A stretch of DNA of 64,000 bases from NCBI RefSeq assembly GCF_003918875.1, contig NW_025765346.1:124001-188000 (forward strand), read 5' to 3'. Below are positions 1 through 24,774 of the stretch, piece after piece. A model generated the notes under the pieces. It made no database searches and was not told where the DNA came from. It was given only the letters and a program-made list of their open reading frames with translations. How positions within the stretch are numbered: position 1 is the first letter of the stretch; every line of letters begins with the position of its first letter. The stretch is from Haliotis rubra (taxonomy: Eukaryota). A program made the position numbers and the translations under genes.

Positions 1-1049
1 TTCAGATCACTTCCTGGTGTGAAAACATGCATGTATTTTCGAGCTTCTCATGTGAAATATTTAAATACTTAAATACTTAAACCAGTGTGAAACCGGCATA
101 TTGTGTGTAGCACAACAGATGTCTATTCCATTATTCAGATTAAAAATCGCTGTGTCCATCTTGCTTGACTACGAGGAAAGACCGTTACACAGTGAGTATT
201 ATGCGGCTATTTTGATCATCATTTTTGGTTTCATCGAGTTACGTTTTACGCTTTTAGCAATATTCCAGCAATATCACGGCGGGGGACACCAGAATTTGGC
301 TTCACTCATTGTACCCATGTGGGGAATCGAACCCGGGTCTTCAGCGTGACGAGCGGACGCTTTAACCACCAGGCTACTTCACCGCCCCTGGTGACACCTA
401 AAATGTTTCCAATTTTCGATTTCGAATTCAAGTAGAAAAGTTTCTTATGCAGTGAACTACGTTTGTAACGAACACGCTTGTTGCGAAATGATGGGTATAA
501 AGAACTGTTTTGGCTCCGGTCACTTGCTGCATATCTTAACGCAAATACGTATAACGAACTACGTAGAAGAGAATAAATTTTAATATGCCAAATTCGAAAC
601 GAACAAAATAGAAATGCGAAGATTATCTGAAAAGAGGGAGAGAGCGAGCCATTGGTATGTCGATATTGGGAGTGTTAGAGATCCACATTGGAAGGACCTT
701 CTGCTGTTCCAAAAACACGGTGTGTTCCCTTTTTCAGTGTTACCGTTTGACAGGCAGAGCACGTGACAGGCCCTGAATAGGAATAGGAAGACGGCGAGTG
801 GCCACCCACACCCACAACCGTACCATACACGGTATCCGGAGATCAAAGGGTTTCACAGAATCTACACATTCGGAAATTCAAACCCGTATGTTTAGCTTAA
901 CTGGAGAACGCTGTCACCACTAGACTACCCGTTAAAACCATTGTGCCTGAGATGGAGACGTCCTTGACCCGGCAAAAATATAGCTGTATCTTCCCTGTTG
1001 GATCTAGTAGCAGGAAATACATACAGCAACAGTGACCACGATCTCAGTG

Positions 1050-4000: not shown

Positions 4001-5652
4001 AAACTAATGACTATTAATTAATTCATGATTCATTCACATACAAGGTACGGATTCAAAGAGGAATAGTCAACTACATACCATGTTTGTCGCAGGAACTCAT
4101 TGAGGAGGATAGATTGCTATCGCCTGTATGGTTAAGTGGATCATACTTCTGAGAGAGCAGAAGGTGAGCGGTTCGATCCCCGACCACGTCGTACGAAACG
4201 AAAAGCGTTCACGTACCCTGCTTCGAGCTCTGCTTTGAAGTATACAACACGGAGGTTCTTGAGAGCATATAAAAGTTGATATTCAAGTATAAGACAAATT
4301 ATTATGGATGTCAACTTCTTCTTCTTTTTTTGTTTGGGGCGGTGGGGTAGTCTAGTGGTTAAAGCGTTGGCTCGTCACGCCGAAGACCCGGGTTCGAATC
4401 CCCACATGGGTACAATGAGTGAAGCCCATTTCTGGTGTCCCCCGCCGTGATATTGCTGGAATATTGCTAAAAGCGGCGTAAAACCAAACTGTCAGTCAGT
4501 CAGTCTTTTTTTGTTTACTCAACGTTTCTGGTTTTTCTTTGCCCATTCATCATTCACCTGACAAAGGATCAAGGAAAAGTCCAGACACGTTGTGTATACA
4601 ATACAGAAGAACTTGACATTCATAATATTTTGTCTTACACAACAAGGAATTATCGGCCCGACGTATGTATACTGCGTCTGAGTCTGACATCCGTGGTACA
4701 TTGCGGCACGACTGAAAAAGAGCATTAGTCTAGACTGGAACACAAACACACGTACGCACGCATGCACGTTTGTACGCACGCACACACCCACCACCTACGT
4801 GTATTCACGTGACTTCAGAAGTACTATAGTAACTCCATTTTACATCACCAGCAATGTGTGAGCTGGCAGACAGTAAACTATGTTGTTTCGTTGTCATCAA
4901 AGTGGAGCAGTTACATCTCGCCCCGCCATATAGCTGGAATAATGCTGAGTGCAGCCCTAACAAACAAACATGTCGCCCCTATGCATCAGTTGTTTTCGCC
5001 CATGCGTATAGTACAGATTAATAACATTGCTAATAACAAATAGCGCGATGTCACATACGTTGATACGTTATACGACAATAAATATATCAGATAATTCCAC
5101 ATATATACTGGACAAAAATAGTTAGGGATATATGTAAATTTTGAAATTATGAATAATGATCTATTTATTCATTGACACACTGATTAAATATCAATCATGA
5201 AAATACAATATCCCTAATTTATTTTGTCCAGTATATTTTCTTCACCGTGCTTTTCAGGTGGATCGCTGGAATGGACTGATGAAACCCACTGTTCCGCCAA
5301 CACAAATGACAGCGTCATCTACGACAACAAGACACTCCAAATCAAACGACGCGGCACCTACCGTATCTACTCCCTCCTCACACTGAAATCCCAACACTGG
5401 CACCGACAACCTGACAACGTCGTACATGTTATGAAGAGGAGCAACACAAACCTGCCCAACCTGGGTAGCATATACATCATCATGGCCAAGAAGACATTAC
5501 CGGAAGTCAGCGGGAGGTTCGTCACGAGTTATCTGTCCGCGACTGTCAGACTGAGGCAAGGTGATCACGTGTCTGTAACTGTGAGCAACATGTCATATGT
5601 CTACCGGTTTCCGTCATCTAATTTCTTTGGTTTGTACTACGTTGGGGAGTGA
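1050..5652 (+). CDS. TNF-superfamily ligand (type II membrane, FasL/TRAIL-like), 3 coding exons, ~297 aa
   Basis: Exon 1, 1050-1436: ATG, transmembrane segment VIFTTVLVLSLSANAAFLFYLY, Cys-rich stalk, donor GTAAGT, phase 0. Exon 2, 3880-3991: TTCAG acceptor, FTDQ...RKSGAHLYLN (TNF strand A), donor GTAAGT, phase 1. Exon 3, 5258-5652: LEW, LQIKRRGTYRIYSLLT, TSYLSATVRLRQGDHVSV and NFFGLY TNF-domain motifs, then stop. Joined length is 894 nt with the frame intact. Confidence 0.9.
4336..4500 (+). mobile_element. tRNA-derived SINE family A (representative full copy)
   Basis: GGGGCGGTGGGGTAG.CTAGTGGTTAAAGCG A box, GGGTTCGAATCCC B box, and tail GCTGGAATATTGCTAAAAGCGGCGTAAAA. Other copies lie near 237-388(-), 1637-1797(-), 2156-2310(-), 3463-3607, 7696-7855, 13585-13672(-), 26083-26245(-), 32650-32813(-), 32987-33130(-), 40570-40720(-), 47241-47403(-), 49606-49774(-), 60931-61110 and 62905-63050. 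Confidence 0.9.
5106..5233. mobile_element. ~130-bp Tc1/mariner-type MITE, copy 1
   Basis: TIR TACTGGACAAAA..AGGGATAT / ATATCCCT..TTTTGTCCAGTA, flanked by TA. Near-identical copy at 57599-57726. Confidence 0.8.
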
Positions 5653-5976
5653 TCGAAAGCAGTAACATATTTCTGTAAAATCTGTCAACTTTTGCAGGAG
5701 AATCATATCATGTACTTATAATGTAGGTTTTAGCTGTTTTATTGTAACATATGAAAAGCAGGTGGTATACGTCGACATGCACGAACCGGATTCCATGAGA
5801 TCCCAAAACACCGGGTTGAGGAAGACCTTTCGAAACCGGATTTTCATGGGTAAAAATTACATGAGTATGATAACTGTACATCACATAACGGTACATTCTG
5901 TAACTTACAATGCCTTCGTAAAAAATCAAGGGAGTGTCGACCTAAGAAGTTTGGATACAATTATATGTGTCAACTA

Positions 5977-6373
5977 CAGTCCGTTTGGTTTTACTTGAGG
6001 CCGATGAATTGCTCACTAACACAAAATCTAATGAATGCAACAAAACCAAATATTGCACAGTCACATGGAATCGAGAGACCAACTCTGATAATTTGTCCCA
6101 TAATTTTGGACACCCGAATAAAAATGTTGTTTAACAAACCATCATTATTTTGCTGTCACTTTTCGCTATTGTTTACGAGGGGGATCACTTGGGGTGGAAC
6201 AACAAGCGCGTGTAGTGAAATTTAAGTTTCACACTTGTTTCTCGCATATTTGAGACAAATCACCAGAGTTGGTCTGTCGATTTAACGTGACTGTGCAAAA
6301 TTTGGTTTTGTTGCAATTATTAGATTTTGTGTTAGTGAGCAATTCATCGGTCTCAAATGAAATCAAAGGACTG
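5977..6373. mobile_element. Tc1/mariner-type MITE with ~140-bp TIRs
   Basis: TA|CAGTCC...GGACTG|TA termini and long imperfect inverted arms (GATGAATTGCTCACTAACACAAAATCTAAT / ATTAGATTTTGTGTTAGTGAGCAATTCATC). Confidence 0.85.
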
Positions 6374-8561
6374 TAGGTCACCGATCGGGACCATCCGATC
6401 CGGTCAGTCGTGTCTTACTACAAGACCAGTCCAATCTCGGATCACATATCTCCACCAGCGTGAACAGTATTGGCTCAGTGAAGGAACACGCACACGTGAA
6501 ATGAACCCATGTCCCGGTACTGCCTCTAACCACCAGCGTTGGTTCCTGAAGATCAATTCTAACCCTAAATTCACAACATTGTCTCTTTGAATCACAACCA
6601 TGTAAGATGAGTTCCCATGTGACGATTCTAATGCCTGCTTATCGCAATTGGTGCAACTTTTGCATAAAGACACATCTTGTTTGTTCGTTGTGTGTTGTTT
6701 AATGCCGTTGTTGACTGCGCTCTGTAAATAATCGAGTCCGGACCAAACAATCAAGTCATCAACAGCATGGGCACCGATCTACGCAAATGGGATACGGTGA
6801 CATATGTCAACCAAGTCAGCCAGTCTGACTACCGGATCCCGTTAGTCGCCTCTAAATACAAGCTTGTGTTTCCTGAATTCCCAATCCGGAAGTATAAAAT
6901 GTGTTACTATTGTAATTGCTTTGAACATGAACACTACACTCACATTATATTACATGATACAAAAATAGAATTTGGAAGATCTTATTCTGAGGAATTCATA
7001 CATTTTCACCCTAAATTCATGGAAAAATCTAAGATTTATGTTTCCGGAAGTAAGGGATGACCCACATTTTGAAGCCTTGGTGGAACCAAAGTCAAATTTT
7101 GACATGACATTTAAAAATTTAGTAATCGGTTTGACATCATGAGCATCGATCTACGATTTGAAATACGATGACATGTGTCAACCAATTGCAAGTCAGCGAG
7201 TCTGACCACCAGATCTCGTTTGACGCCTCTCAAAAGCATGGGTTGTTGAAGACCAGTTGTTATCAAGATACTCGCGGAGTTTTCAAGTGTGTAAAACTGT
7301 TGGCGTCAGAGCGATTTGTTTGTTGTTCAACGCCGCACTAGCAATATTCCAGCTAAATGGAGATCAACCTTTTAACTAAAGTCGACAGAAATTCCACTTC
7401 AGATTAACTAATGTGCATATGGCCATGTGAATTAGATATACAAACGTCCAGTTTTTGTTGTATGTGTTTTAACGCCGCACTCAGCAATGTTACAGCTGAG
7501 TGATCAACAGTATGGGATTCGGACTCGGCAATTGGGATACGATGACATGTTATCAACCAAGTCGGCGAGCATGATCATGTGATCCCGTTAGTCGCCTTTT
7601 TACGACAAGCATGGGTTACTGAAGACCAAGTCTAACCCGGATCTTCACGGGTCCATTCGAACGAAAATATCCATGTATATACCGTTTGTATCAAGTGGGG
7701 AGGTGGGGTAGCCTAGTGGTTAAAGCGTTGGCTCGTAACGCCGCAGACCCGGGTTCGAATCCCCACATGGGTACAATGTGTGAAGCCCATTTCTGGTGTC
7801 CCCCTCCGTGATATTGCTGGAATATTGCTAAAAGCGGCATAAAACCAAACTCACGTCCTACATGGAATGAAACCCAGCTTTCTAAGTATACATTCTGTAC
7901 ATACGCTTTATCTGTCAAAGGAAATGCACATGGCACGCTATCGGATGTAGAACCGAAAGCGAAAATAAGACGGATGCTTCAAATGAAAACATTGAGCAAT
8001 GACACATTGTTATATCTGTTAGATATCCTCTTTATGTCTTAATTGGAAGGGAGTACTTTTATCAAAACGTACGGTCGTAGGCAGTGATTGATTTATACAT
8101 TGATCGTGAGCTGTACGGAAAATAGAATACATTGATTCTTAAAATAGCATTCTCGGGAAATTGAACTTTATACCAGCTGGTTATGCCCTGGAGCGAAAAT
8201 AGAACACGTTGATCCTTAAAACAGCATTCTCGGGGAATTCTACTTGATGCCACCTGGATACACACTTGACATATTTTAAAACAGGAAGGAGTTGAGGATT
8301 GTTGAAAAATACACGTTTAGTTTAACAGTGGAAATGTCCAAACGATTTCCCTTGTTCAAATATCACTCCACAACGTTGTTAAATCAACCCGATTGACCAC
8401 ACATTCCTGTAATTTCAACACTCACTTAACTGGATGTTACGCTTAATGTTTTAATTCTACACATCCTTGCTTTAGTTCATAACCTTTTTATTACCTCAAA
8501 TAACCAAAAAGTATCATTTCGTCGACCAGGATATTACATTATGTAAACAGTGATGGGAAGT

Positions 8562-8802
8562 AGTGAGTGAGTTTAGTTTTACCCCGCACTCAGCAATATT
8601 CCAGCTATATGGCGGCGGTCTGTAAATAATCGAGTCGGGACCAGACAATCCAGTGATCAACAACATGAGCATCGACCTGCGCAATTGGGAACCGATGACA
8701 TGTGTCAACCAAGCCAGCGAGCCTGACCACCCGATCCCGTTAGTCGCCTCTTACGACAGGCATGGGTTACTGAAGGTTCATTCCAACCCGGACCTTCACG
8801 GG
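8562..8802 (-). mobile_element. SINE-like family B (GTCGTAAGAGGCGACTAA core; representative copy)
   Basis: ~240-bp repeat ACCCGTGAAG...CATGCYTGTCGTAAGAGGCGACTAACGGGATCGGGTGG...ATATAGCTGGAATATTGCTGAGTGCGG. Copies lie near 2447-2672, 3650-3855, 6690-6850, 7460-7652, 17000-17160, 19545-19780, 29427-29649, 41290-41470, 46650-46878, 48986-49220, 54640-54880 and 61645-61768. Confidence 0.85.
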
Positions 8803-9610
8803 TGTGATGGGGAGTAAGTTGAGATGGGATTAACGTCGCTTTTGATCGTATTTAGAGAGATACTGTTACACCATTACAGTTTAAAGTGGATACCACTACA
8901 GCAAACTGTCTCCGAACTGACCAGTTCTAGTCTTATTTACTTATTGCCAAGCCATAGGCCACAAGCTACTATCTTTTACTACTTTTTCGTAGGACTTCAC
9001 GAGAGATTGCACACTCGGACTAACCCTCTGTTCACAAGACCTAGTGCCACACTGTTCATCTTAAGAATCTATTGTCAGACTCGGTGAGTGAGTGAGTGAG
9101 TTAATATTTAACGTCACATCGGCAATATTTCAGCCATATCGTGACGAGAACATATGTGACATTGAAATGGAATATATGTATATTATAAAAACCTGTCGAC
9201 GAAGGACAGTAAAACAACTAGAATATCACAATTACAACTAAAACTAGTGTGGAAAGTCAAAACTGATAACACTATTTGGACAATACAATATAAAAACAGG
9301 CTATAGATCGCCAACAACTGAAGGTAGATCACCATACATACTAGGGACTATGATGCATGACTTACAGTACCTTCGAAATCGACTTATTTGGAACAGACCA
9401 TGGTTTCATGCAAATTAGTCTGCGATGATATTGCATTACAAAGGAAACTTTTTAAATGCCCATTTTGAAATTAAAACTAGCTTCATTATAAACGATAGCT
9501 GACGTAAAAAGTAATAACTTTAAGACTGAAACTATTAAGGATTTAGCTACCATGGAGCCGTACTATCACTATAAAATGAAACAGGTATGAGGGGTCGTCT
9601 CCTTCATATT

Positions 9611-10540
9611 TGAATTCTTGTTTCTAACCTGGTATTCATCTGCTAGGGGAACATTTTGTTTGTGTCGAACATCGCACAACTCGAAGTATTTATAAGTATA
9701 TATATTCCTTCAAATTCGAATTCTTGTTTCTAACCTGGTATTCATCTGCTAGGAGAACATTTTGTTTGTGTCGAACATCGGACAAATCGAAGTATTTATA
9801 AGTATATATGTTCCTTCAAATTCGAGTGGGTGAGTGAGTTAAAATTTAAAGTCGCATCGGCAATATCTCAGCCAAATCGTGACTAAAACTAGTTCTAAAT
9901 TCATAATACATACATATAATATATAAAACCCTGTCAACGAAGGACAGTAAAAGTACTAGATTATCACAAAATGAGTTAAACCTAGCTAGCATATATCTTT
10001 AAAAGTAGAAAGCTATTTTTGGACAATACAATGTAAAAATGGGCTAGTAATCGCCAACAACTGAAGGTAGATCACCATACTAGGGTCCATGGGGACTTAC
10101 AGTGCCTTTGCTACCTGCATGGACGCTAGCTGGATTTACAGCATCCCTTCAGCCATTGGCGTTTATGCTGAGATTTAGCCATAAGTTGAAATGACAAAAT
10201 TACTACGATTAAAAACCTGGTAGACTTAAATTTACTTGAAATGTTATGGGAATTACGTACCCTCTCAGGAGGACAATATTTTTACGCTCTCATTTTTACT
10301 GCTAGTTTCTCATTTAAATCACCAATACTAAAAGTGCATGTATGTACAAAACATATGAATCAAATTCACCTATCAGTTCTTTTTTCGTTTAAAAATTCGA
10401 TAATAAAATGATAATTGACATTACTTCAAATTCGAATTCTTGTTCCTAACCTGGAACTTATATGCTAGGAGAACACTTTGTTTGTGTCGAACATCGGACA
10501 AATCGAAGTATTTATAAGTATATATGTTCCTTCAAATTTG
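9611..10540. repeat. ~105-bp unit, two tandem copies plus a third copy beyond an inserted family-C element
   Basis: GAATTCTTGTT.CTAACCTGG...TTTGTTTGTGTCGAACATCG..CAA.TCGAAGTATTTATAAGTATATA at ~9612, ~9718 and ~10434. Confidence 0.85.
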
Positions 10541-11346
10541 ACAAACTAGTGTTTGAATGTCTAAACATGAACCTAATGACAATTCGAAATTATCAATTCC
10601 TTGTAAATATGGTAAAAGTTATAAAGATAATTCCGCGTAACTCATCTGTTATTCGCTCACCAATACAATATACACTACAGGAGTCTTTGCGTAAACACCC
10701 AATGTCCGATCTTAAAGGTGCACGCCTTAGTTTGCCATGTCTTTGAGACCATCGCCGAAGATGTGGGTAATTTGGATTATACGTCTCGCAATGTAATTGT
10801 TTTAAGGTTATATTAGTTTATTTAAAGGTCCGTTCTCAAGGTGCGACTTGAAGTAACAACCTATAGTATCTACCTGTCGTATCTACATATAGATTTAAAA
10901 TGAGATGATAAATGAGTTGATAGGTCTTGGAATCTCTCGCGATAATCTCGTCGTGGGAGATGGTGGCGTTAATTGCCGTACATTTGATAAATGAAAAAAA
11001 AAGAAACCACAAATCTGTTTGGGTAGGCAGTGGATACTGCGCAGACGTACCACCGGCGTTTAGTTCGAGTCCCAACGTGGGTCTACGGCTTCCAAATTTG
11101 CGACTGAATGAGTTGAGTTTTAGGCCGTATTAACAATATTCCAGCAATATCACAACGGGGAATACTCGATTATTTACAGCCCGCAGCCATAGAGCTGGAA
11201 TATTGCTGAGTGCGGCGTAAAACTAAACTCACTCAGTCATTTATAATGCATGCGTGTATTACTGAAAATGATGTAATAATATCAGTAAAATTGGTACTAA
11301 CGTACACCGAGATTTTCTCTACAGGCACTGAACTGAATATTGTTGG

Positions 11347-11521
11347 TGTATCATATGACATCACGAGAATGGTTTCAGTGACAACACTACCCTCGTGAGA
11401 CATGATATTCGATCTCCTGCAACACACCAGTACTCTGTCACAAGACAAATGACCCGCTCTTATCCCGGTCAGCATCCTGGAACGTAACTCGTGATGGTCA
11501 ACAAAGTGTTGTGTTTTGGCG
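11347..11521 (+). promoter_or_regulatory. Conserved upstream non-coding block, serpin 1 copy
   Basis: High similarity to 19039-19216 while the flanks have diverged. The regulatory role is inferred. Confidence 0.45.
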
Positions 11522-11611
11522 AGTATGTTAATATTTTGGGAACCGTTTATTTCTTTTTTTTTTGGAGGTGAGGTGAAATTGGGTTTCACGTCGTGCTTGA
11601 GAATATTTCGC

Positions 11612-11917
11612 TCATATGACGACGTGCATGCGTGTGTGTGTATGTACGGCTGGTTGTACTAGCCCAGACTTAGCTGGTTTTATAGTGCTAGTCCACTGAG
11701 ATACCATGCCGCAGTGAAGCATGGATATCCCCCACTCAGACACATTATACTGACTCCGAGCCGACCAGTCCTTGTTGTACCCATTAATGCCGAGCGCCAG
11801 GCAGGGACCAACAAGTACCATATTTTAACGTCTTTTGGCATGATGCGATCGGGGATCGAACCCGCGACCTTCCGCACTCCGGGCGGACACTCTAACCACG
11901 ACACCACGGAGGCGGTC
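11612..11917 (-). mobile_element. tRNA-derived SINE, MetaSINE-like core
   Basis: Minus strand has A box GTGGTGTCGTGGTTAG, B box GGGTTCGATCCCC, core AAAGACGTTAAAATATGGTACTTG..CCTGCCTGGCGCTCGGCATT and a CA-rich tail. Confidence 0.75.
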
Positions 11918-12827
11918 TATTCTTTTTGTATGCCTTTTGGATCAGTACCCTTAAGGTTCCACGGAAGAAAATCCATTGTTGACATGCTGTATAAATTGCA
12001 TTCCAGCACCACCTCCAAAGCAAATATTAAGAGCTTTGCAGCAGTGACTGAAAAGTTATCTTATCTCAATACCCAAGGAACAATTATAATCCCGCTTATA
12101 TTACACACAATTAATAAAATGATGCGCATACAGTTTGGATATCAAAGAAAGATTTACCTCTTCACATCACGAACAAGATGAACGTCAATAATGAAGCATA
12201 CAGATTTTTGCTTGATAACGGTGTGAACATCTACACCAAAACGTCGCTATAAGCAATAAACAAGAAGTTATACATGGAGGTGTATGCTTCATTAGTGGCC
12301 CACCAACTTCTAGAATGCCGATCAAACGATTAAGATGGACGTCATGTTTCTCCCTGGTTCCTAACATGACATTTTGATAATGGTCAAAAATAATAATAAA
12401 AAAATCGAAAAGAAGTGTCCCCAAATCATAGGAGTCTCCTTTGTATGGTTCCAAATTTATCATAAGCGTGTCCCTATCGTTGCTTATTATTATATCAATC
12501 GCTTCTCTGAATCAATTTCTTTACAGACTTCCGACATAATTATATCGAGGGAAAAAATAAGGGATCACATGAAAGCACAAGTATTCCTTTATTTTTTTTC
12601 CAGGTTTCTTCACAAGCTGTGCGATACAATGCTTGTGAAGAAATCTTTCAAAACAATAAAGGAACACTTGTATTTCATGTGATCCCTTATTTTTTCCCCT
12701 CAGTATATTAACGGACCACTGTGATTGTGACAAACGGAGTGTACATGATACATTCGCCCAAATACAGCAGTCAGGCGTGTCACAAACCGTGTCACTCCTC
12801 CGTTCACAGAACAATATACAGCACATC

Positions 12828-15800
12828 ATGGCGCCTGGGCTCATCTTCACCATCTGCTCTTGTGCTCTGCTGATAGCTGGTAATATGCCTTTTATTGCAC
12901 TATATGTCACAGTCAATGTGTAAAATGAATAGTATTTTACAGGAAATTGTGTGTATTTTATATATAGAATAATTCCATGTATAATATGATTGAGATTTAA
13001 TAACGACTCGAGACATATTATTAAGGCCCTTGTGTTTATATACTATCTTTGTATGCTGCAATAGAGGTAGCGAACAGCTAGTTCACATGATTTACATTCA
13101 TTATTAATTAAAACTTAGATACATAAGATATACACAAGATACAGTTTGAAACAGTTCTATTTCATTATTCGATGTGTATAAGTCAACTTTACACATGGAT
13201 GAGGTGTGTCAAAATACAATTTTGTAAAATGTTCAACCTCAGTGAAATGAGCATTGGGACATGGAGGTACTGTCTAAACGCTAGATGGAAGAGAAGAGGT
13301 GTTCTTTGATCCATCAACAAAAACATGAAAATACCTTTCAGAATCTTTGAGAATGTCACACATATCAGTCAGTGTCGTGTACGTCCACCATTAAGACTTA
13401 ACGTTGACTTCCCAACCTTTTCTATCTTCAAATCCAGCTAAACATTCATTCAACGTTATTGTTCCAGCTGGGGTATTCTGTTGTTCACAGTAACTGTGTG
13501 CGCCCTGAGCCAAATTGGTATTGAGCTATGCGAACTGAAATGAAAGCCTTTGCTATCTATGAGCAACAGATTATCCTTTTGAGACTGACTGACTAAGTTT
13601 GGTTTTAAGCCGCTTTTAGCAATATTCCAGCAACATCACGGTGGGGGACACCAGAAATGGGCTTCACACACCGTTTAAATACTCTTTTCAAGGATATTGT
13701 GAAGGGTGATGCAAGTTCAGAATCAGACTATGTGTTTCGATTTTTTATATTTTCTACACATGAAGTAGTATCATAGTTCTAAGACATGTGTATATCATTT
13801 GACACTTCTGTTCCGAGAAATAGAATCCTTTTTTGACTTTCCACTTAGCCGGAGTCTTGTAAAGGCACTAAATGGACATAAAATGACATAGATAAGATAA
13901 ACTTTATTGTCCCGCAAGGGAAATTTGTCTTGCATTTAAACAGCCAATACAATGCCAAGAAAAAAAGATAATTTAAAGTACATCTATACACACAATGTCA
14001 AGCTAATCACAATATAATAATGAATCATAATTAAAGTACATAATATAACAATCACTCGTGCAATCAATGTCTTCACTGTTACAATTTTGGAGGTAGATTT
14101 AGAAGTTTTACGATGTATGGAAAAATTACTTTGAAGTTCTATTAGTCTTGTAATACAAGATTTTGAAATGGCGGCCAGATGGCAGAAATTCATAACATTC
14201 ATTTAATAAGTGTAATGGAGCAGATTGAATGGGTAATATTTGCATGGAGGTGATTGGCATTTTTGCATTATTAATGCTTTAATGTTCAAGATGAATAAAA
14301 GCCGGAATATTTCCTTCATGGAAAAGACAAACTTATTTACTTGCTCAACAAATTGAAAATAATGCTTATTCATTTCACTTACATATTTTGCCAAACATAT
14401 TGCAGTGGTGTATGCTACACTGGAGGCGACTGGTAACCATGACACCGAGCTCACTGAGGATGCGATCAGAGAAAAGCGAGGGCTAAGAGGGAGACATCGC
14501 CATCGACACAGGAGCCACAGACAGGGAGATGGAGATGGTGATGGAGATGAAGATGGAGACGACAATGTTCGTAGTGGTAGGGGAAGAGGAGGAGGGCGCA
14601 GGCGCAGACCTGGACGAGGCCGACGACCTGGTGGTAGACGTGGTGGGAGAGGTCAACGTAGGATAGCAAGTGCCACAGATCTATCCGACATGCCTCAAAG
14701 AGCACAACGACTAATCACTGCCCTGGTTGGTGCACAGAACAGTTTCACAGCCAATCTCCACCGTCAAGTTGGACAACCTGTTACAGATGTTGTGTACTCT
14801 CCGTTTAGCCTTCACCAAGCGTTGACCATGACCTTCATGGGCGCTATGGGTAATACTGCGTTTCAGATGAAGAGAACACTCGCTTTACAGGGACTAGGGC
14901 GACGTACGCGCCGAGCAGCAAAGAAGCTTAACGAAGTTATCAGCCATTCTGGCAATGCTACCCTGAAAACGGCGAATGGTGTGTATGTTAAAGCAGGATT
15001 GACTGTCGTGGACGATTTCACAGAGAGTCTGCGTGTATTCTACCAGGCTAATATCTCCTCGTTTGACTGGGAACACCCAGATGGACCAGAAGGTCCGATT
15101 AACGAATGGGTTTCTGAGCAGACGAATAATCTCATTCCAAACCTAGTGGCCCCGGATACCATAGATTCGTTGACAGCTATGATTCTAGTCAACGCGATCT
15201 ACTTTAAAGCAAAGTGGAAGACGCCATTCACACCATCCCTAACAACTCAGCAGATGTTCAGAAAGTCACGTACTGAGCAGGTGCCCGTTCAGATGATGCA
15301 AGTAGAAGGGATGTTCAAGTTGGGCACTGTTCCTGGTCATGCTGCCAGAATATTGGAGTTACCATATGAAGATGACCGCTTCAGTATGCTCGTGATGCTT
15401 CCCAATGAAATCGAAGACCTACCCACACTGGAGAACGGGCTGACGGTAGATCTTCTCGCCAGTAGGTTGGACACTGTCGTAGCTTCGGACTTGAAGGTAT
15501 ATTTGCCTCGTTTCAAACTGGAGACAGCAATATCAGTAAAGGAATCTTTACAAAATATGGGGATGACCAATCCATTCCTGCGGGGAATGGCAGACTTCAG
15601 CGGCATCGTGAGCACTCGTCAGCTTTACATTTCTGATGTACTTCATAAAGCTGTTGTCGACGTTAATGAAATTGGAAGTGAAGCTGCTGGGGCCTCAGCA
15701 GTTATCATTTGTAAGTATTTCGTTTCTAAAAATGGATTCTATAGCCAAATCAAATAGAAAAACAGATCCAAATAAAACCACAAGTCTTTTTCAGGTTGCA

Positions 15801-16557
15801 GTTGACTTGTGTTTCCATTTGCTCCCCATTTCAGTGATTGAACATATGTTCATGAGTTCGTTAGAATCGTTCTCCTGTGTATGTTGGTATGTCACGCTCC
15901 TGTAAGTTGTGTTATTTAATCATTGTATTCATTTTGAGAGTGATTAAAAGTGAAAGCATTTTGACGTACTTTGATTCCAGAAATATTCCATTACTGAGTA
16001 TGTCCTACCGCTAATGCTATTTCAAGATATATTTTTTCTATTTTACTTAGTATTATCTAAACATGTTTAGATAATTTGCAGAACGTACATGTGGGAATAA
16101 TAAGGTATTGCACAGTCGTGTTTCAGTGGTAGGTTGTAATTCCTAAAATACGTATCATTACAAAACCTTTTTTATCATGTTAGTCGTGTCTACATACATG
16201 TTTGCAGACGATGGATCATCAACATTCATGTCTCGCAAAAATTTGAAACAGAAAACAGTTCTCAGCTGACCTCGTTCATGTAAAACGTATGTTTGCTCCT
16301 AAGTAAGATAACTATCATTAGATATTATGGTAATGTGTATTTTCCTTAAAGATATACTTGTTGACATTTGGAAGACATGCAATATTTGTCAGTGAAATAT
16401 TGAGCTAAAAGTCTTTCACTGTTTACTGTTTACTTCAGCTCTCGAATCACTTCGAATAATGCCCGAGATTCGCTGTGACCACCCCTTCCTCTTCATCATC
16501 AGAGACAACGTCTCCAAAGCCAACCTCTTCATTGGCAAGTTCTCCGGTGGGGCCTAA
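12828..16557 (+). CDS. Secreted serpin paralogue 1 (~491 aa) with basic/acidic N-terminal extension; predicted P1 Glu
   Basis: Exons are 12828-12879 (signal peptide MAPGLIFTICSCALLIA), 14406-15710 and 16439-16557; both introns are phase 1, GT-AG. Serpin motifs: VYSPFS, NAIYFKAKW, LPRFKLE, HKAVVDVNEIGSEAAG hinge, and DHPFLFIIRD...LFIGK at the C-terminus. Confidence 0.95.
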
Positions 16558-19038
16558 ATGTGGATTATTCCAGGTCCCCCGAATTGATCGTATTCTGACT
16601 CAACTTTGGAGTCAACCATCATATGTTGCCTGGTCACTTATTATTACAAAAAAGGAAGTGTAGTTGGATATAGATATAGCAAGTCTCTCACATCTCGACT
16701 ATTCACATCCATGTATCGATTAGAAAAGTAAAAGAACATGGATTGCAGCTGTTAATAGGTTATATGTTTTTTTTCCAATAAGTTCCTCATCAGCCACAGG
16801 AAGTAAATTTTAATGAATATCTAATACCTCTTGTCCATCGTGATGTGCACCAGTTATTGATTGTAAGAGAGTCACATTACTGGATGAAAAATGTATTTGC
16901 TTAATATCAAATGTTACACAAGAAGCCACTGTCGTACGTGCGTATAACAAAGTTCTGGAATAAACTATTTCCCAACTCTGTGAATGTCAAGTTACCAAAT
17001 GAGTGAGTGAGTGAGTTTAGTTTTACGCCGCACTCAGCAATATTCCAGCTATATGGCGGCGGTCTGTAAATAATCGAGTCTGGACCAGACAATCCAGTGA
17101 TCAACAGCATGAGCATCGATCTGCGCAATTTGGAACCGATGACGTGTCAACCAAGTCAGTTACCATATGAAGATATTTGCTGTACATGATATGCCTGGTC
17201 TCCATTCAATTCGTCCATATCACTGCTGACATATACTTGCGAGTGTATTTACAGACTACATATGTCCGAAACATACTGTTGACATGTGACACAAAGTAAC
17301 AGATGAACGTAACATATCTCAAAAATTGGGTTCCAATGCTGTACCGTGTATCTCGTGTATGCTATGATAATGTGTGGATCTTATTCTGGCGTGATTTCCT
17401 ACTGTTGTGACAACAAATTAGAGTGAGTGAGTGAGTGAGTATTTATAGTGACATAGTAATATTTCAGCCATATCGATTAGTATGACTTCGACTTCAGTTT
17501 ACACTGTTTTGTACAGTGTGATGCTCACATGATGAAAAGTCAAACATGTGTGTGAAATACAAGCATATATTTCAGCTATTTGCACATTTAACCATGTACA
17601 AACATGTTTGAGGAAACGACGAGTGTGCTTCCCTAAGCGTGATACGACCACTGACTTTGAATCAGCTTCCCAGGGACATGCATGTGATCGACAGCGTTCC
17701 ACAACACAGCGGCAAAACCTGACTTTAACAAGAGGGTCATCACTTAGTTTCTCCTACTACACACAGAAATAACAGCAGCGGCCTTACAGTTTCTGTTCAG
17801 GCAGTTTCTATTAAGGTCCCATTTCCCTCCTCCCATTTGAGGAGAGAATATGCAGTCTAATGTGTCGATGTAAGATAGCTGGGGTATTGTGGACTGCTGC
17901 CTGAAAGGCTAGCACTGCACCAAATGGTACAAACAGTCACATCACATGTGCACGCACGTCACTCTACAACTGGAGTAATCTTGAAAGATTGTTTAGCCAT
18001 ATTTCACCGTACACGTGTGCAGCATACATTTAAGTTACACCTGGCACCTGAACAACGTTTGACAAAATGTTGAATTAAAATTGTAATTACTCTACTGTAT
18101 CACCCAGTAATATCAGTAATCGTGACTGAGGTCTCTTTCAGTTTCGGCTTCATGCTGATTGAAAGTTCCTTGAAGTTGTACAGATGTTTGCCAAGATGCC
18201 TAATTGTAACATTTGGTAACGTGAATGTTTTGCTGCAAATATTTGACGATTAGAAACTGTCCGTTTTCATGACGTCACAAATGATCTAATGGCATGTCGT
18301 CTCATAAAAAGATACTACGATAACTTCGTATTAAGAATGATCTCCTCACAACCAGTCCTAATCCCTGATTAATGTGGAAATTGCTCATGGCTCCACTCAT
18401 GTGAAACTCTGTTACCCGAGTTGTAATTGGGTAATACTCCTTGTTCGCTCATTTACATGGAGGCGCTTGTACCTCTTCATAAAAGTGGGGGATGCAGAGT
18501 ATAAAGCCCTAGTTTGTACATCACAAGTATAGTTCAATAAACCGCATTATGAATTAGGCGTCTCACAATGCAATGGTGTAAAGTATAAACCTAAACTGCA
18601 ATAATGCGCCATTGCAACAGCTGCAGTATTACAATACTGCTGACTGCATAAAACAACCGTGATGATCCGGGTCAGAATTGGTCATCATCAATCCATGCTT
18701 ATCGTGAGAGGTGACTACATATGGTCAGATTGAAGAGGTGGTCTTACACACACATACCCAAACAGACCCCCACCCCACCCCATCCCATGCTTCCCACCCC
18801 TTGAGCATACAACTACTGGTAATCTCGGTTAATATTTATATCTCCCAATATTGAAACACGGAATGAAAGAAGATATTTCTTTCCACCATAAGTTCCCTTT
18901 CTGCACAGTACGTATTTCCACAGAATAATCACTAGAAGTGCATCTTAAAATTTTAAGTGACCGATTTAAAATTAGAACAAGAAGGTTTTCAAAATTAAGT
19001 AAGGGGACATTTAAAATCTTAGATGTCTTTATTATTCA

Positions 19039-20229: not shown

Positions 20230-23200
20230 ATGGGGCCTAGTCTCATCTTCACCATCTGCTCTTGTGTTCTTCTCATAGCAGGTAATACGTCTTGCATGTG
20301 TATTGATGTTTCATTCACGTTCTTATATGTAGAACATATCACGTCCTATATTGTTGTTTTTTAAAATGAGATTTAAACTTTTATATAAGGTGAAGAACAT
20401 CCGAGGTGCGTCAGCACCCGGAATCGTCTATGGGGCGTGAGATATTACCAAGGCTGTTTTTTATATATATTGGCATGAACTATGTTTGTACCCAAAAAAA
20501 CGCTCCTTTGATGCAGTGCGAAAGCAGTGTATGATATCCGTCTCATATTAACCTAAAGTCTGCACTAAACTGCACTTTGGCATTTTATTATGTTCTTGAA
20601 GGCACATTATATTGTTTCAGTGTTGACATTTGTCTGATCGGAACTTGTTCCGTTGAAAAACATTGCATCTATCTTACTATGACCCTTAGGTATTTGTAAA
20701 TGTGTTGAAATCTGACACTGATTCAGTATTGAACAGTAATCTAACACTCAACATTTCAAGGACACAATTTAAAAGAAATATATATTCTTTTGGTTTGAGT
20801 CAATATACCTTAGAGACACTTGATTCTGTTTTCATTCGAATAAAGATTCAAAACTTATTTTAGACAAATAAATAGATACATTTATCGTATACGTTCAGAG
20901 TCACGTGAATTGATATGGGCAATATATATTTTACTGAAATTGACGGGACAACTTGCATGTAAATTGAATATTCCAGGCGCGTTTTACCTCGGGCAATTCA
21001 ACAATGGAACGTCTGGACAAAGACGAATAAGACAAGCGTGCGTACTGTATAAACGCGGTGGTCTCCAGGTGGTATGTGACATAGCAATAGTGACCTGGAA
21101 TTCTCTTAAAATGCAGCTTTTCACTTTAATTAAACTATCAAAGCTGAGGAACTGATATGACCCCAGTATAAAGTCTCGGTCTAAGTCAAATCCATCCAAT
21201 ATCTTGATTGAAGCGAGTTTGAGTATAGTTTGGGATTCCATTTGGCTGATTATATTCAAGGGCATTCCGTAACGCCTTATGTAGTGTGATAACATACAAG
21301 TTTGCCCTGAACTATTATGGCTGTGACGTTGTCATAGTCCAAAGCAAAACTGTCCATTACCCATTGGTGTAGTGTGTAAAAATACCACCACAGCCTTCTA
21401 TGTTGTGTAAGCACACCCAGATTCCATCTGCCTAGGCAATGAATGTTCCGCTTCAGTAAACATAGACATGTGGACAAAGCATGGGAGACAGTATGTCTCT
21501 AATGCCTCAATCGTAATTTCAAATATTTCAATTCAAGAGGCCATTTCATGCCCAAACTCACTGTTTTGTAAACTCGGAAAAGAGTATTGACTCCGATTTT
21601 GACATGACGTAAACAATTGTTCACTGATGTGAATTGTTATAATTTTCCCACATGGGCAAGATTACACTATACACACATGTCTAAGTATGAGTAATTTAGT
21701 GCACTGAAAACAGAACTAATGTGAAGGAACACATTTTTATTGTCAAAGGCATGATTTCACATCATTACAATTTATGGGCACGCATTTACTTAACTTCACA
21801 ACCAAACAGTAATGTCCTTTAGCTATGAGGTAGTCATTTTAGAATTCATTCAAAATTATTGTTCCAACTGTCATATTATGTTGTTCCCAATACCTATCTG
21901 CCCTTATAACTCAAAGCTGCGTCAAATTGGTATTGTACTAAGTGGGTTCTGTAATGAAATATGTTCGTGTAAGACTTTGCTATCTATGAGCTACATATTA
22001 TCTTTTACATCCTTCAACGTACACTTTCATGGCAGATTTGAAGTTCAAAATAAGATAATGTGATTCTATGTTTTCTGTAAATAAAGTAGTATCATATTTC
22101 TTATAATTGTCCAGTTGTGTCTATCATATGACTTATATGTATCCCTCAGTCTCCGGTTTTAAATGGATGAGAGTCAGAAATTTGATCAAACGTAGGCAAG
22201 GAGATTATTTCATGACACTTCTTCAACTGCATGCATGACATAAGAGCAATTGGCATTGTAGACCATTAATGGTTTAGTGTTTCCAAAAATAGAAAATGTC
22301 CGTAATATTTCGCTCATGCAAAAGACATACCTAATTACTTGTTCCATACATGGAATCTAATGCTTATTCATTCAAATTAAGTATTTTGCAAAACATATTG
22401 CAGTGGTCTATGCTACTCTTGAAGCAACTGGTAACCATGACACCGAGCTCACTGAGGATGCGATCAGAGAAAAGCGAGGGCTAAGAGGGAGACAACGCCA
22501 TCGACACAGGAGCCACAGACAGGGTGATGGAGATGGTGATGGAGGTGAAGATGGAGAAGACAACGTTGGTAGTGTTAGGGGAAGAGGAGAAGGGCGCAGG
22601 CGAAGGCCTGGACGAGGCCGACGACCTGGTGGTGGTAGACGTGGTGGGAGAGGTCAACGTCGTACGGTAGATCTATCCAACATGACTCAAAGAGCACAAC
22701 GACTAATCGCGGCCCTGGTTGGTGCACAGAACAGTTTCACAGCCAATCTCCACAGGCAAGTTGGACAACCTGTTACAGACGTTGTGTACTCTCCGTTTAG
22801 CATTCATCAAGCATTGACCATGACATACATGGGGGCTAATGGGGATACAGCAAATCAAATGAAGAGAACACTCGCTTTACAGGGACTTGGACGACGCACG
22901 CGTCGAGCAGCAAAGAAAATCAACAAAGTCATCAGACGTTCTGGCAACGCTACCCTGAAGACAGCGAATGGCGTGTATGTGAAAGCAGATTTGAATGTTG
23001 TGGATGAGTTTTCAGATAGTCTGCGTGTATTCTACCAGGCTAATATTTCCTCGTTTGACTGGGAGCACCCAGATGGTCCAGAAGGTCCGATTAACGAATG
23101 GGTTTCTGAACAGACGAATAATCTCATTCCAAACCTAGTGGCCCCGGGAACCATAGATTCGTTGACAGCTATGATTCTAGTCAACGCGATCTACTTTAAA

Positions 23201-24774
23201 GCAAAGTGGAAGACGCCATTTACACAATCCCTAACAACTCAGCAGATGTTCAGAAAGTCACGTACTGAGCAGGTGCCCGTTCAGATGATGCAAGTAGAAG
23301 GGATGTTCAAGTTGGGCACTGTTCCTGGTCATGCTGCCAGAATATTGGAGTTACCATATGAAGGTGACCGCTTCAGTATGCTCGTGATGCTTCCCAATGA
23401 AATCGAAGACCTACCCACACTGGAGAACGGGCTGACGGTAGATCTTCTCGCCAGTAGGTTGGACACTGTCGTAGCTTCGGACTTGAAGGTATATTTGCCT
23501 CGTTTCAAACTGGAGACAGCAATATCAGTAAAGGAATCTTTACAAAATATGGGGATGACCAATCCATTCCTGGAGGGAATGGCAGACTTCAGCGGCATCG
23601 TGAACACCGGCCAACTGTACATCTCTGATGTAATTCATAAAGCTGTTGTCGACGTCAACGAAGTCGGAAGTGAAGCTGCTGGAGCCACAGGAGTTGTTAT
23701 GAGTAAGTATTGAATCTAAAAGCGACCAACCCGTGTCAATAGCCACAACAAATTGAAATACAGACTCCAGTATAACCACAAGCCTGTTTTAGGAGGTAAT
23801 TGACTTGCTTTTGCATGTGTTGGTTACGGAGCCACTTGTGGGTCATGATTCGTTCCCCTTTTCAGTGGTCACGATATGGCTGAAGTACTGCCGATGTGAC
23901 TTAAATTCGTAACTCACTCACCAACCCACTCCTTTTCAATGATTCATTAACATATGTTCATGATATAGTTAGAACATAGTTCTGCAACATAGTTTTTTTA
24001 ATGGATATTTCTTATTTCACTACAGGCTGATAAATGAAATCGTCTGTTATCATCACTATTTGATCATACATAAACACATGACTGCGATACAGCCGAGAGG
24101 AGTATATCTGACTATATCCTATATCTAATCATGATTTAATGTGTTTTTAAAAAAAAAATTTACTCAGTACCTAAGTACAGACAAAATAATGGTCAGCTGT
24201 TCTGTTCTCTGTTTATGTCCAGTTTAGAGTTCACTGCCAGATTTCGTCTTGTTAGAATCATGTATATGGTGCAAACACGATCACTCTTAACCAGGTTTAA
24301 CTACATTTCCGCATCATTGACATTTGGATGACCTGTTGCTGAAATGTTGTTTCGTGTGTTTTTCGCCAATGTTCCTCAAGTTGCCAGAAAAGTAATTATC
24401 AAAGGGTCTCGTCCGAAATTTGTATGTGACATTAATTCATAAACTGCGTGGCAAAAGAATGATAATTTAATTTGGCGAAAACAATGTCATAATTGAAAAT
24501 GGAAATAGTCTCAAAAGCACTACAGTGTTTAGGGCTTAAACACAATTAGATATCCATGTAAAACATATCACCATCGAATAACCGTTACTAATAGACAGTA
24601 TATATTTTGTTAACTTTTAAAGACATATGGCTACAATGTTTATTATTTCCTTCAGCTCTCACGTCACTTCGAATAACGCCCGAGATTCGCTGTGACCACC
24701 CCTTCCTCTTCATCATCAGAGACAACGTCTCCAAAGCCAACCTCTTCATTGGCAAGTTCTCCGGTGGAGCCTGA
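20230..24774 (+). CDS. Secreted serpin paralogue 2 (~489 aa); predicted P1 Thr
   Basis: Exons are 20230-20281 (MGPSLIFTICSCVLLIA), 22404-23702 and 24656-24774, with the same structure and phases as paralogue 1. Reactive-centre loop (RCL) EVGSEAAGATGVVMTLT-SLRITP. Confidence 0.95.

What the first reader, a model, noticed from the sequence alone, without database searches (positions are those of the whole stretch)
14406..14680. Serpins fused to a furin-site-led charge-patterned extension (cationic-acidic-cationic), resembling a pre-pro-peptide cargo
Seen: after the signal peptide both serpins have an acidic spacer TLEATGNHDTELTEDAI, then REKR, then GLRGRHRHRHRSHRQ, an acidic block GDGDGDGDEDGDD, and an Arg/Gly block GRGRGGGRRRRPGRGRRPGGRRGGRGQRR before the serpin fold (paralogue 2: 22404-22670). 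Known: R-X-K-R is the furin/proprotein-convertase consensus, and signal + acidic pro-piece + cationic peptide is the layout of many antimicrobial-peptide precursors. Most serpins lack such extensions. Inference: the ~60-aa tail is unmasked on secretion and either tethers the inhibitor to polyanions (microbial surfaces, glycosaminoglycans, extracellular DNA, mucus or shell matrix) or is released as a bioactive peptide, making this a two-function precursor.
Basis: partly seen in the sequence, partly recalled or inferred. Interest (0 to 1): 0.8.

Follow-up and report, generated by a model that had tools for sequence, protein, structure and literature searches.

The report
Abalone serpins with arginine-rich tail
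Two neighbouring abalone genes encode secreted protease inhibitors (serpins) with a conserved, disordered, highly positive N-terminal tail behind a conserved convertase-type cut site; this is an unusual add-on whose function is untested.

Summary
The window is Haliotis rubra. It carries two tandem three-exon serpin genes. In both, exon 2 opens with about 94 residues that lie between the signal peptide and helix A. The order is an acidic piece, R-E-K-R, a His/Arg block, an Asp/Gly block and an Arg/Gly block.

RNA contigs join exon 1 to the predicted acceptor at 14406 and run unbroken through the extension. The extension is also present in H. asinina, H. rufescens, a diverged H. rufescens paralogue and an unnamed gastropod transcript. 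R-x-K-R is invariant in all six. The extension's dN/dS is 0.17-0.47. AlphaFold2 models it as disordered.

Neither the word search nor the exhaustive profile search found it outside these serpins. All six also have an unusually basic helix D, which is the classical heparin site of serpins.

My best reading is an inhibitory serpin whose short acidic pro-piece is removed by a furin-like convertase. That would leave a polycationic tail (net +11 to +13) attached, which together with helix D binds polyanions. Cleavage and binding are inferred, not shown.

The antimicrobial-peptide-precursor analogy fits poorly:
- there is no conserved second release site;
- the tail has almost no hydrophobic residues;
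- the pro-piece does not balance the tail's charge.

I class it as a new variant of a known kind (serpins with N-terminal extensions).

The parts
12828..12879 (+). Gene 1 exon 1 (coding part): start codon and first 17 residues of the signal peptide; donor GT at 12880
   Evidence: Sequence. Spliced joint 12878/9 -> 14405/6 with GT..AG ends in RNA contigs of runs X2 and X12. Matches the N-terminus of P0001.
14406..15710 (+). Gene 1 exon 2: end of signal peptide, the whole extension, and the serpin core up to P4 of the reactive-centre loop; donor GTAAGT at 15711
   Evidence: Pfam Serpin E = 2.5e-88 from residue 110 of the ORF. Joint 15710 -> 16439 in X12.
14417..14467 (+). Acidic pro-piece (residues 22-38, five Asp/Glu)
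   Evidence: Low pLDDT in the AlphaFold2 model.
14468..14479 (+). R-E-K-R (residues 39-42), proprotein-convertase consensus followed by Gly-Leu
   Evidence: R39, K41 and R42 are invariant in six sequences of three lineages. It is the only R-x-[KR]-R in the N-terminal 125 residues that is not followed by Pro.
14480..14524 (+). His/Arg cationic block (residues 43-57)
   Evidence: Kept in the orthologue group, looser in the diverged paralogues.
14525..14563 (+). Asp/Gly acidic block (residues 58-70), encoded by an imperfect (GGAGAT)n repeat
   Evidence: Tandem Repeats Finder: 14525-14559, period 6, 5.8 copies. Present in five of six sequences, absent in L001.
14576..14662 (+). Arg/Gly block (residues 75-103) with the invariant R-x-x-R-P-G-R-G core
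   Evidence: Invariant columns R82, R85, P86, G87, R88, G89. pLDDT below 50.
14897..14941 (+). Helix D of the serpin fold (residues 182-196), six Arg/Lys in its first nine residues
   Evidence: Helix 182-196 is the fourth helix of the core in the AlphaFold2 model. Net charge is +4 to +8 in the six extension-bearing serpins versus -0.7 +/- 1.7 (maximum +2) in 66 relatives.
16439..16557 (+). Gene 1 exon 3: P3 to the C-terminus of the serpin, including the bait and the D-H-P-F motif; stop codon at 16555-16557
   Evidence: Splice joint in X12.
20230..20281 (+). Gene 2 exon 1 (signal-peptide exon)
   Evidence: Matches the N-terminus of P0002.
22404..23702 (+). Gene 2 exon 2; extension 22415-22663 with R-E-K-R at 22466-22477
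   Evidence: Pfam Serpin E = 7.1e-92.
24656..24774 (+). Gene 2 exon 3 (bait and C-terminus; stop codon at 24772-24774)

Best explanation
These are two tandem, expressed genes of Haliotis rubra for secreted, probably inhibitory serpins. They derive from the clade-B-like (leukocyte elastase inhibitor / serpin B6-like) stock and have acquired a signal-peptide exon and an intrinsically disordered N-terminal extension of about 94 residues. Proposed mechanism: (1) The signal peptide is removed after V-Y-A. (2) A furin-like proprotein convertase in the secretory pathway cuts after the conserved R-x-K-R and removes a pro-piece of about 21 residues. (3) The remaining tail of about 60 residues has net charge +11 to +13, is rich in Arg/Gly/His and usually carries an Asp/Gly insert. 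It stays attached to the serpin. (4) The tail and the unusually basic helix D bind polyanions such as sulfated glycans of mucus or matrix, microbial surfaces or extracellular nucleic acid. That would concentrate the inhibitor there and possibly tune its activity, as glycosaminoglycans do for helix-D-binding vertebrate serpins. Shown here: gene structure, transcription with the extension included, conservation, purifying selection, predicted disorder, basic helix D. Inferred: cleavage at R-x-K-R, polyanion binding, and that the tail is retained.
For: Identity: P0001 (H. rubra, 491 aa) is 100% identical over exon 2. Serpin domain and fold. The hinge G-S-E-A-A-G-A is of the inhibitory type. Transcripts: GT..AG joints for exon 1/2 and exon 2/3, and a 670-nt contig spanning exon 1 -> 14405-15030 with the full 108 nt of the masked low-complexity part. 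Conservation: the extension occurs in H. asinina, H. rufescens, a 65%-identical H. rufescens paralogue (R-L-K-R) and a gastropod transcript (R-Y-K-R); R39/K41/R42 and R-x-x-R-P-G-R-G are invariant. Selection: extension dN/dS is 0.17-0.47 against 0.11-0.19 for the core among orthologues. Disorder: pLDDT is below 50 for most of residues 27-98, with block means of 41-48 across 31-100. Charge: tail +11 to +13, core about 0 to -7. Helix D is a clear basic outlier. Of three R-x-[KR]-R motifs, only R-E-K-R is not followed by Pro. R-x-[KR]-R as the furin consensus, and helix D as the heparin site of antithrombin, heparin cofactor II, PAI-1 and protease nexin-1, are established knowledge.
Against: No protein-level data exist here: cleavage, secretion and binding are all untested. 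No signal-peptide or convertase-site predictor was available. The tail holds several minimal R-x-x-R motifs and many Arg-Gly bonds, so it could be trimmed or destroyed by trypsin-like or convertase enzymes rather than retained. The middle acidic block is absent in one lineage, so the three-block pattern is not essential. Tissue of expression is unknown because run metadata are coded. Contigs cannot exclude rare isoforms that skip the extension.
Confidence: 0.45

Rival explanations
1. One reading: convertase cleavage at R-x-K-R and at the dibasic pair before the serpin fold releases a free cationic peptide of about 60 residues, antimicrobial or otherwise bioactive. Angiotensinogen releases a hormone from a serpin N-terminus in this way.
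For: A conserved R-x-K-R sits upstream. In the orthologue group a Q-R-R or C-R-R pair precedes the core. The peptide would be strongly cationic. Arg-rich peptides such as protamines and Pro/Arg-rich peptides can be antimicrobial (established knowledge).
Against: The downstream dibasic pair is absent in P0005 and L001, and even in the orthologues it has no Arg at P4. The tail has 4-7 hydrophobic residues in 71-87, so there is no amphipathic character. The pro-piece charge (-3 to 0) does not mask +11 to +13. An internal acidic block of 13 residues is atypical for such peptides.
Confidence: 0.12
2. A heparin-cofactor-II-like switch that arose independently. The Asp/Gly block folds back on basic helix D (or on its flanking cationic blocks) and is displaced by a polyanion. 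That would free a surface that recruits the target protease.
For: An acidic block in an N-terminal tail plus a basic helix D is the same pairing as in heparin cofactor II (established knowledge). PMC2770083 notes that N-terminal cleavage changes the specificity of both heparin cofactor II and Necrotic.
Against: The acidic block is missing in L001. There are no Tyr or hirudin-like motifs. The tail is net positive, unlike that of heparin cofactor II. The AlphaFold2 model gives no confident contact, since pLDDT is below 50.
Confidence: 0.15
3. A shell- or biomineral-matrix serpin: the Asp/Gly and basic low-complexity blocks anchor the inhibitor in the calcifying matrix.
For: Serpins have been reported as shell matrix proteins in Euhadra and Mytilus (PMC6368272; PMC5623705). 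Repetitive low-complexity Asp-rich domains are common in abalone shell proteins (PMC2989941).
Against: The H. asinina shell proteome paper does not mention a serpin. No paper links an abalone serpin to shell. The acidic block is short and is lost in one lineage.
Confidence: 0.08
4. Largely functionless low-complexity expansion (microsatellite-driven) that is tolerated on a secreted serpin. On this view R-x-K-R is just part of the basic composition.
For: Part of the region is an imperfect hexanucleotide repeat. The extension evolves about twice as fast as the core.
Against: dN/dS stays well below 1. The extension persists across lineages whose synonymous sites are saturated (dS above 2), with invariant residues and order. 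R-x-K-R lies in the acidic part, not the basic part. Charge segregation is far above shuffles.
Confidence: 0.1
5. The Pro-protected polyarginine motifs act as non-cleavable pseudo-substrates that bind or inhibit proprotein convertases or other Arg-specific proteases. The protein would then be a double-headed inhibitor.
For: R-R-R-R-P and R-G-R-R-P are followed by Pro, and the first of them is invariant as R-x-x-R-P. Polyarginines are listed among known furin inhibitors (PMC6784293, citing Cameron et al. 2000).
Against: The Arg runs are short (four at most) and interrupted by Gly. The bait loop is not convertase-like. There is no direct evidence.
Confidence: 0.05

Closest known systems
Drosophila Necrotic (Spn43Ac)
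   Same: [quoted passage not shown] The extension is poorly conserved except for a putative scissile bond, and it is cleaved in vivo, which changes specificity (PMC2770083).
   Different: No sequence similarity: the exhaustive profile search returned only the abalone protein. The Necrotic extension is not polycationic, and its site is R/P rather than R-x-K-R.
Heparin cofactor II (SERPIND1)
   Same: An N-terminal tail with an acidic segment combined with a basic, glycosaminoglycan-binding helix D. Tail cleavage alters specificity (established knowledge).
   Different: The heparin cofactor II tail is net acidic, with sulfated Tyr hirudin-like repeats. The abalone tail is net +11 to +13 and has no Tyr. 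The core here is closest to clade-B-like serpins, not heparin cofactor II.
Angiotensinogen (SERPINA8)
   Same: A serpin-fold protein whose N-terminal extension is the substrate of a specific protease. This is the classical case of a serpin acting as a peptide precursor (established knowledge).
   Different: Angiotensinogen is non-inhibitory, and the released peptide sits at the very N-terminus. Here the hinge looks inhibitory, and no conserved second cut site exists to release a peptide.
Clade-B-like intracellular serpins (leukocyte elastase inhibitor, serpin B6/B8/B9; MENT)
   Same: Best sequence relatives of the core: 33-39% identity, top PDB hits 4ga7, 1by7, 4zk0, 2dut. MENT is another case where a clade-B-type serpin gained a basic polyanion (DNA)-binding insert.
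   Different: Those lack a signal peptide and an N-terminal extension (median 9 residues before helix A), and their helix D is not basic.
Cationic antimicrobial-peptide precursors (signal, anionic pro-piece, cationic peptide)
   Same: The order signal peptide, acidic piece, dibasic site, cationic stretch.
   Different: Charges are not balanced, the cationic part is neither amphipathic nor hydrophobic, there is no conserved C-terminal release site, and it is fused to a 376-residue folded inhibitor.

Membership tests
Serpin superfamily (Pfam PF00079), inhibitory type | Significant match to the serpin profile | tested here: met
   E = 2.5e-88 and 7.1e-92, far above the gathering score. 159 PDB serpin sequences match at E below 1e-30.
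Serpin superfamily (Pfam PF00079), inhibitory type | Serpin fold with helices A-F and sheets A-C | tested here: met
   In the AlphaFold2 model the core pLDDT is mostly above 90 and the helix/strand order is as in serpins.
Serpin superfamily (Pfam PF00079), inhibitory type | Hinge with small residues at P15-P9 that allows loop insertion | tested here: met
   G-S-E-A-A-G-A in both genes and all relatives. Inhibition itself was not tested.
Furin / proprotein-convertase substrates | R-x-[K/R]-R motif with a permissive P1' residue | tested here: met
   R-E-K-R/G, R-L-K-R/G and R-Y-K-R/Q.
Furin / proprotein-convertase substrates | Site exposed in a protein that enters the secretory pathway | tested here: inconclusive
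   A hydrophobic N-terminal segment ending V-Y-A, on its own exon. The site lies in a region with pLDDT below 50. No signal-peptide predictor was available.
Furin / proprotein-convertase substrates | Conservation of the site among relatives | tested here: met
   R39, K41 and R42 are invariant in six sequences whose extensions are otherwise 34-43% identical between lineages.
Furin / proprotein-convertase substrates | Observed cleavage | not testable with these tools
   Needs N-terminal sequencing or terminomics.
Cationic antimicrobial-peptide precursors | Anionic pro-piece that roughly neutralises the cationic peptide | tested here: not met
   Pro-piece net -3 to 0 against a tail of +11 to +13.
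Cationic antimicrobial-peptide precursors | Mature peptide bounded by processing sites at both ends | tested here: not met
   The downstream dibasic pair occurs only in the orthologue group and is absent in P0005 and L001.
Cationic antimicrobial-peptide precursors | Amphipathic or hydrophobic content typical of membrane-active peptides | tested here: not met
   4-7 hydrophobic residues in 71-87.
Heparin-cofactor-II-type glycosaminoglycan-regulated serpins | Basic helix D | tested here: met
   Helix 182-196 has six Arg/Lys. Net charge +4 to +8 against a maximum of +2 in 66 relatives.
Heparin-cofactor-II-type glycosaminoglycan-regulated serpins | Net-acidic hirudin-like N-terminal tail with sulfotyrosines | tested here: not met
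   The tail is net positive and has no Tyr. There is only a 13-residue Asp/Gly block.
Heparin-cofactor-II-type glycosaminoglycan-regulated serpins | Orthology to SERPIND1 | tested here: not met
   Nearest relatives are clade-B-like serpins.
Necrotic-type extension | Sequence homology of the extension | tested here: not met
   A profile of the extension against 1.84 billion representatives returned only P0001 and two low-complexity chance hits.

The most novel reading that the evidence does not exclude
The extension is a true second functional module. After convertase unmasking, the Pro-protected poly-Arg/Gly tail acts on its own, either as a released or tethered antimicrobial or nucleic-acid/glycan-binding effector, or as a pseudo-substrate inhibitor of Arg-specific convertases. 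One polypeptide would then combine a serpin trap with an unrelated cationic effector. This module appears to have been invented in the abalone/gastropod lineage on a formerly intracellular serpin.
Probability: 0.12. Interest if true: 0.75.

Novelty: new variant of a known kind. Interest (0 to 1): 0.45.

Why it matters
Few serpins carry N-terminal extensions. The known cases (heparin cofactor II, Necrotic, C1 inhibitor, angiotensinogen) each turned out to encode regulation or a second function. Here a clade-B-like serpin gained a signal peptide, a conserved convertase site, a polycationic disordered tail and a basic helix D together. This suggests an independent origin of polyanion-directed protease inhibition in a mollusc. 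It gives a concrete, testable candidate for how abalone place protease inhibitors on mucus, matrix or microbial surfaces. That is relevant to mollusc innate immunity and to aquaculture disease. If the tail proves inert, the finding is only an annotation curiosity.

Tried and rejected
1. Word-index search with the extension alone (P0001 residues 1-112) returned only the four Haliotis orthologue-group serpins.

2. Exhaustive HMM search with the six-sequence extension profile returned P0001 plus two low-complexity chance hits, P0121 and P0122. Inspection showed both to be unrelated. Low-complexity bias filters may hide weak relatives.

3. P0006 at first looked like a relative without an extension. 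Its transcript L001 in fact encodes the signal peptide, R-Y-K-R and an Arg/Gly tail. The gene caller had started at an internal Met.

4. Literature searches for abalone serpins, shell-matrix serpins and arginine-rich serpin extensions found no description of this feature.

5. The run metadata are coded, so tissue of expression could not be read. Run X1 holds no transcript of the gene.

6. The antisense ORF 14203-14565 is only the mirror image of the low-complexity coding sequence. I did not pursue it.

7. I did not use the AlphaFold2 model to infer contacts between tail and core, because pLDDT there is below 50.

8. The first search would already have listed any 40-62% identical relatives of suitable length.
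Full report
WHAT IS THERE

The window is from the blacklip abalone Haliotis rubra. The NCBI protein 'serpin B6-like [Haliotis rubra]' (P0001, 491 aa) is 100% identical to the translation of 14405-15709. There are two tandem genes on the + strand, each with three coding exons.
- Gene 1: 12828-12879, 14406-15710, 16439-16557.
- Gene 2: 20230-20281, 22404-23702, 24656-24774.

Exon 1 encodes 17 residues of a hydrophobic leader. Exon 2 begins directly after ...ttgcag. It encodes the last leader residues (V-V-Y-A), the whole extension, and the serpin core up to P4 of the reactive-centre loop. Exon 3 encodes the bait and the C-terminus, including D-H-P-F. Pfam finds only the Serpin domain, starting about residue 110 of the exon-2 ORF (E = 2.5e-88 and 7.1e-92).

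CHECK OF THE OBSERVATION

Gene 2 has the same plan with about ten differences.

Charge blockiness is well above composition-preserving shuffles in all five annotated sequences: z = 3.7-6.4, and at most 8 of 5000 shuffles reach the observed value. Part of the Asp/Gly block is an imperfect (GGAGAT)n repeat.

IS THE EXTENSION IN THE mRNA?

I laid Logan contigs of four runs on 12700-16700. Run X13 covers the introns evenly, so it behaves as DNA. X2 and X12 cover only exons.

Both X2 and X12 have a GT..AG joint from 12878/9 to 14405/6, which is the predicted acceptor. One 670-nt contig in X2 runs from exon 1 to 15030. The 108 record letters between its two laid parts equal the 108 genomic bases (14512-14619) that the tool masks as repeat. 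The extension is therefore contiguous in that transcript.

X12 also shows the exon 2/3 joint 15710 -> 16439. No joint that skips the extension was seen. Contigs cannot exclude rare isoforms.

CONSERVATION

The extension occurs in:
- H. asinina (P0003);
- H. rufescens (P0004);
- a diverged H. rufescens paralogue (P0005, 62% identical over the full-length alignment and 68% over the core, on another contig);
- a Logan transcript, L001.

P0006 had been called from an internal Met of L001. The full L001 ORF has a signal peptide, an acidic piece, R-Y-K-R and an Arg/Gly tail, but no middle acidic block. L001 comes from polyA RNA of a 'mix of gastropods' (PMC6466128). No annotated Haliotis protein is close to it, so it may come from another gastropod. 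That is an inference.

Across the six sequences the invariant positions outside the leader are R39, K41 and R42 (R-x-K-R) and R-x-x-R-P-G-R-G in the tail.

Among orthologues the extension has dN/dS of 0.17-0.47, against 0.11-0.19 for the core. It is constrained, but about half as strongly as the core. Between lineages synonymous sites are saturated, yet the order of the parts is kept.

The locus is syntenic. A TNF-domain gene lies upstream and an F5/8 type C gene lies downstream in both H. rubra and H. rufescens. H. asinina also has a tandem pair.

IS THE EXTENSION FOUND ELSEWHERE?

A word-index search scored on residues 1-112 alone found only the four orthologue-group proteins. An exhaustive HMM search of 1.84 billion representatives with the six-sequence profile found only P0001 plus two unrelated low-complexity proteins. 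Among 66 related serpins the median length before helix A is 9 residues.

STRUCTURE

The AlphaFold2 model (72-sequence alignment, mean pLDDT 81) gives a confident serpin core. pLDDT is below 50 for most of residues 27-98, with block means of 41-48 across 31-100.

The fourth core helix, 182-196, is helix D. It carries six Arg/Lys in its first nine residues. Net charge of this segment is +4 to +8 in the six extension-bearing serpins, against -0.7 +/- 1.7 (maximum +2) in 66 relatives. Helix D is the heparin site of antithrombin, heparin cofactor II, PAI-1 and protease nexin-1 (established knowledge).

THE CONVERTASE SITE

R-x-[K/R]-R is the furin consensus (established knowledge). The site lies in a disordered, otherwise acidic stretch and is followed by Gly-Leu, or by Gln in L001. 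Of the three R-x-[KR]-R motifs in the first 125 residues of P0001, the other two are followed by Pro, which disfavours cleavage. The first of those two is invariant as R-x-x-R-P. Several minimal R-x-x-R motifs without Pro also exist in the tail, so protection is not complete.

After cleavage the remaining extension would carry +11 to +13 on a core of about 0 to -7. The pro-piece is -3 to 0.

INTERPRETATION

I read the protein as a secreted inhibitory serpin with an inhibitory-type hinge. Its short pro-piece would be removed by a furin-like convertase. Its polycationic tail, together with helix D, would bind polyanions and so position or regulate the inhibitor.

The conserved site, the disorder, the selection and the helix D charge are shown. 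Cleavage, binding and tail retention are inferred. I give this confidence of 0.45.

The released-peptide or antimicrobial reading is weaker, at 0.12:
- the downstream dibasic pair is not conserved;
- the tail has almost no hydrophobic residues;
- the charges are not balanced.

A heparin-cofactor-II-like intramolecular switch (0.15), shell-matrix anchoring (0.08), neutral low-complexity expansion (0.10) and a polyarginine pseudo-substrate for convertases (0.05; polyarginines are listed among known furin inhibitors in PMC6784293) remain possible.

COMPARISON WITH KNOWN SYSTEMS

The closest functional analogues are Drosophila Necrotic and heparin cofactor II. Necrotic has a long, unstructured extension that is poorly conserved except for a scissile bond and is cleaved on immune challenge. 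Heparin cofactor II loses specificity after N-terminal cleavage. Both are described in PMC2770083, which also states that very few serpins have N- or C-terminal extensions. Angiotensinogen is the classical serpin that acts as a peptide precursor (established knowledge).

None of these is homologous in the extension. The core is clade-B-like. No paper in the library describes this abalone extension. The proteins are already in public databases as automatic models.

VERDICT

The feature is real, expressed, conserved and apparently restricted to this lineage. It is a new variant of a known kind, namely a serpin with a regulatory N-terminal extension. Interest is 0.45.

Noticed in passing
window 15698-15710 + 16439-16470 (gene 1); 23690-23702 + 24656-24690 (gene 2): Counting from the hinge, the canonical P1 is Glu455 in gene 1 and Thr in gene 2. 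An Arg lies three residues further on in both. The intron splits the bait loop between P4 and P3, so exon 3 is a bait cassette.
   Followed up: partly
window 15698..16447 (RNA contig of run X12): One RNA contig replaces the 20 nt across the exon 2/3 junction with a gene-2-like bait that differs at 2 nt. It reads G-A-V-V-T-L-T instead of G-V-V-M-T-L-T. It may be an allele, a third copy or a chimeric assembly, and it suggests the bait loop is polymorphic.
   Followed up: no
window 13583-13670: A short repeat in intron 1 has enormous depth in all four runs, and the sequence running on from it looks tRNA-like (...GGGGAATCGAACCC...). It is probably a tRNA-derived SINE.
   Followed up: no
window 5224-5652 (+) and 45444-45827 (-): There is a TNF-domain exon upstream and an F5/8 type C (discoidin) exon downstream of the serpin pair. 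H. rufescens has the same neighbours, but with a single serpin there.
   Followed up: partly
window 50960-54196 (+): ORFs with endonuclease/exonuclease/phosphatase and reverse-transcriptase domains, consistent with a LINE-like retroelement.
   Followed up: no
P0002 (gene 2 isoform X2) C-terminus: The NCBI isoform X2 of gene 2 ends in a different short C-terminus that lacks the bait and D-H-P-F. This implies an alternative 3' exon or read-through, which would give a truncated, non-inhibitory product.
   Followed up: no
L002 (H. rufescens paralogue P0005): The annotated P0005 has 44 extra N-terminal residues ahead of a Met that aligns with the start of the other signal peptides. The upstream start is probably a mis-annotation.
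   Followed up: no
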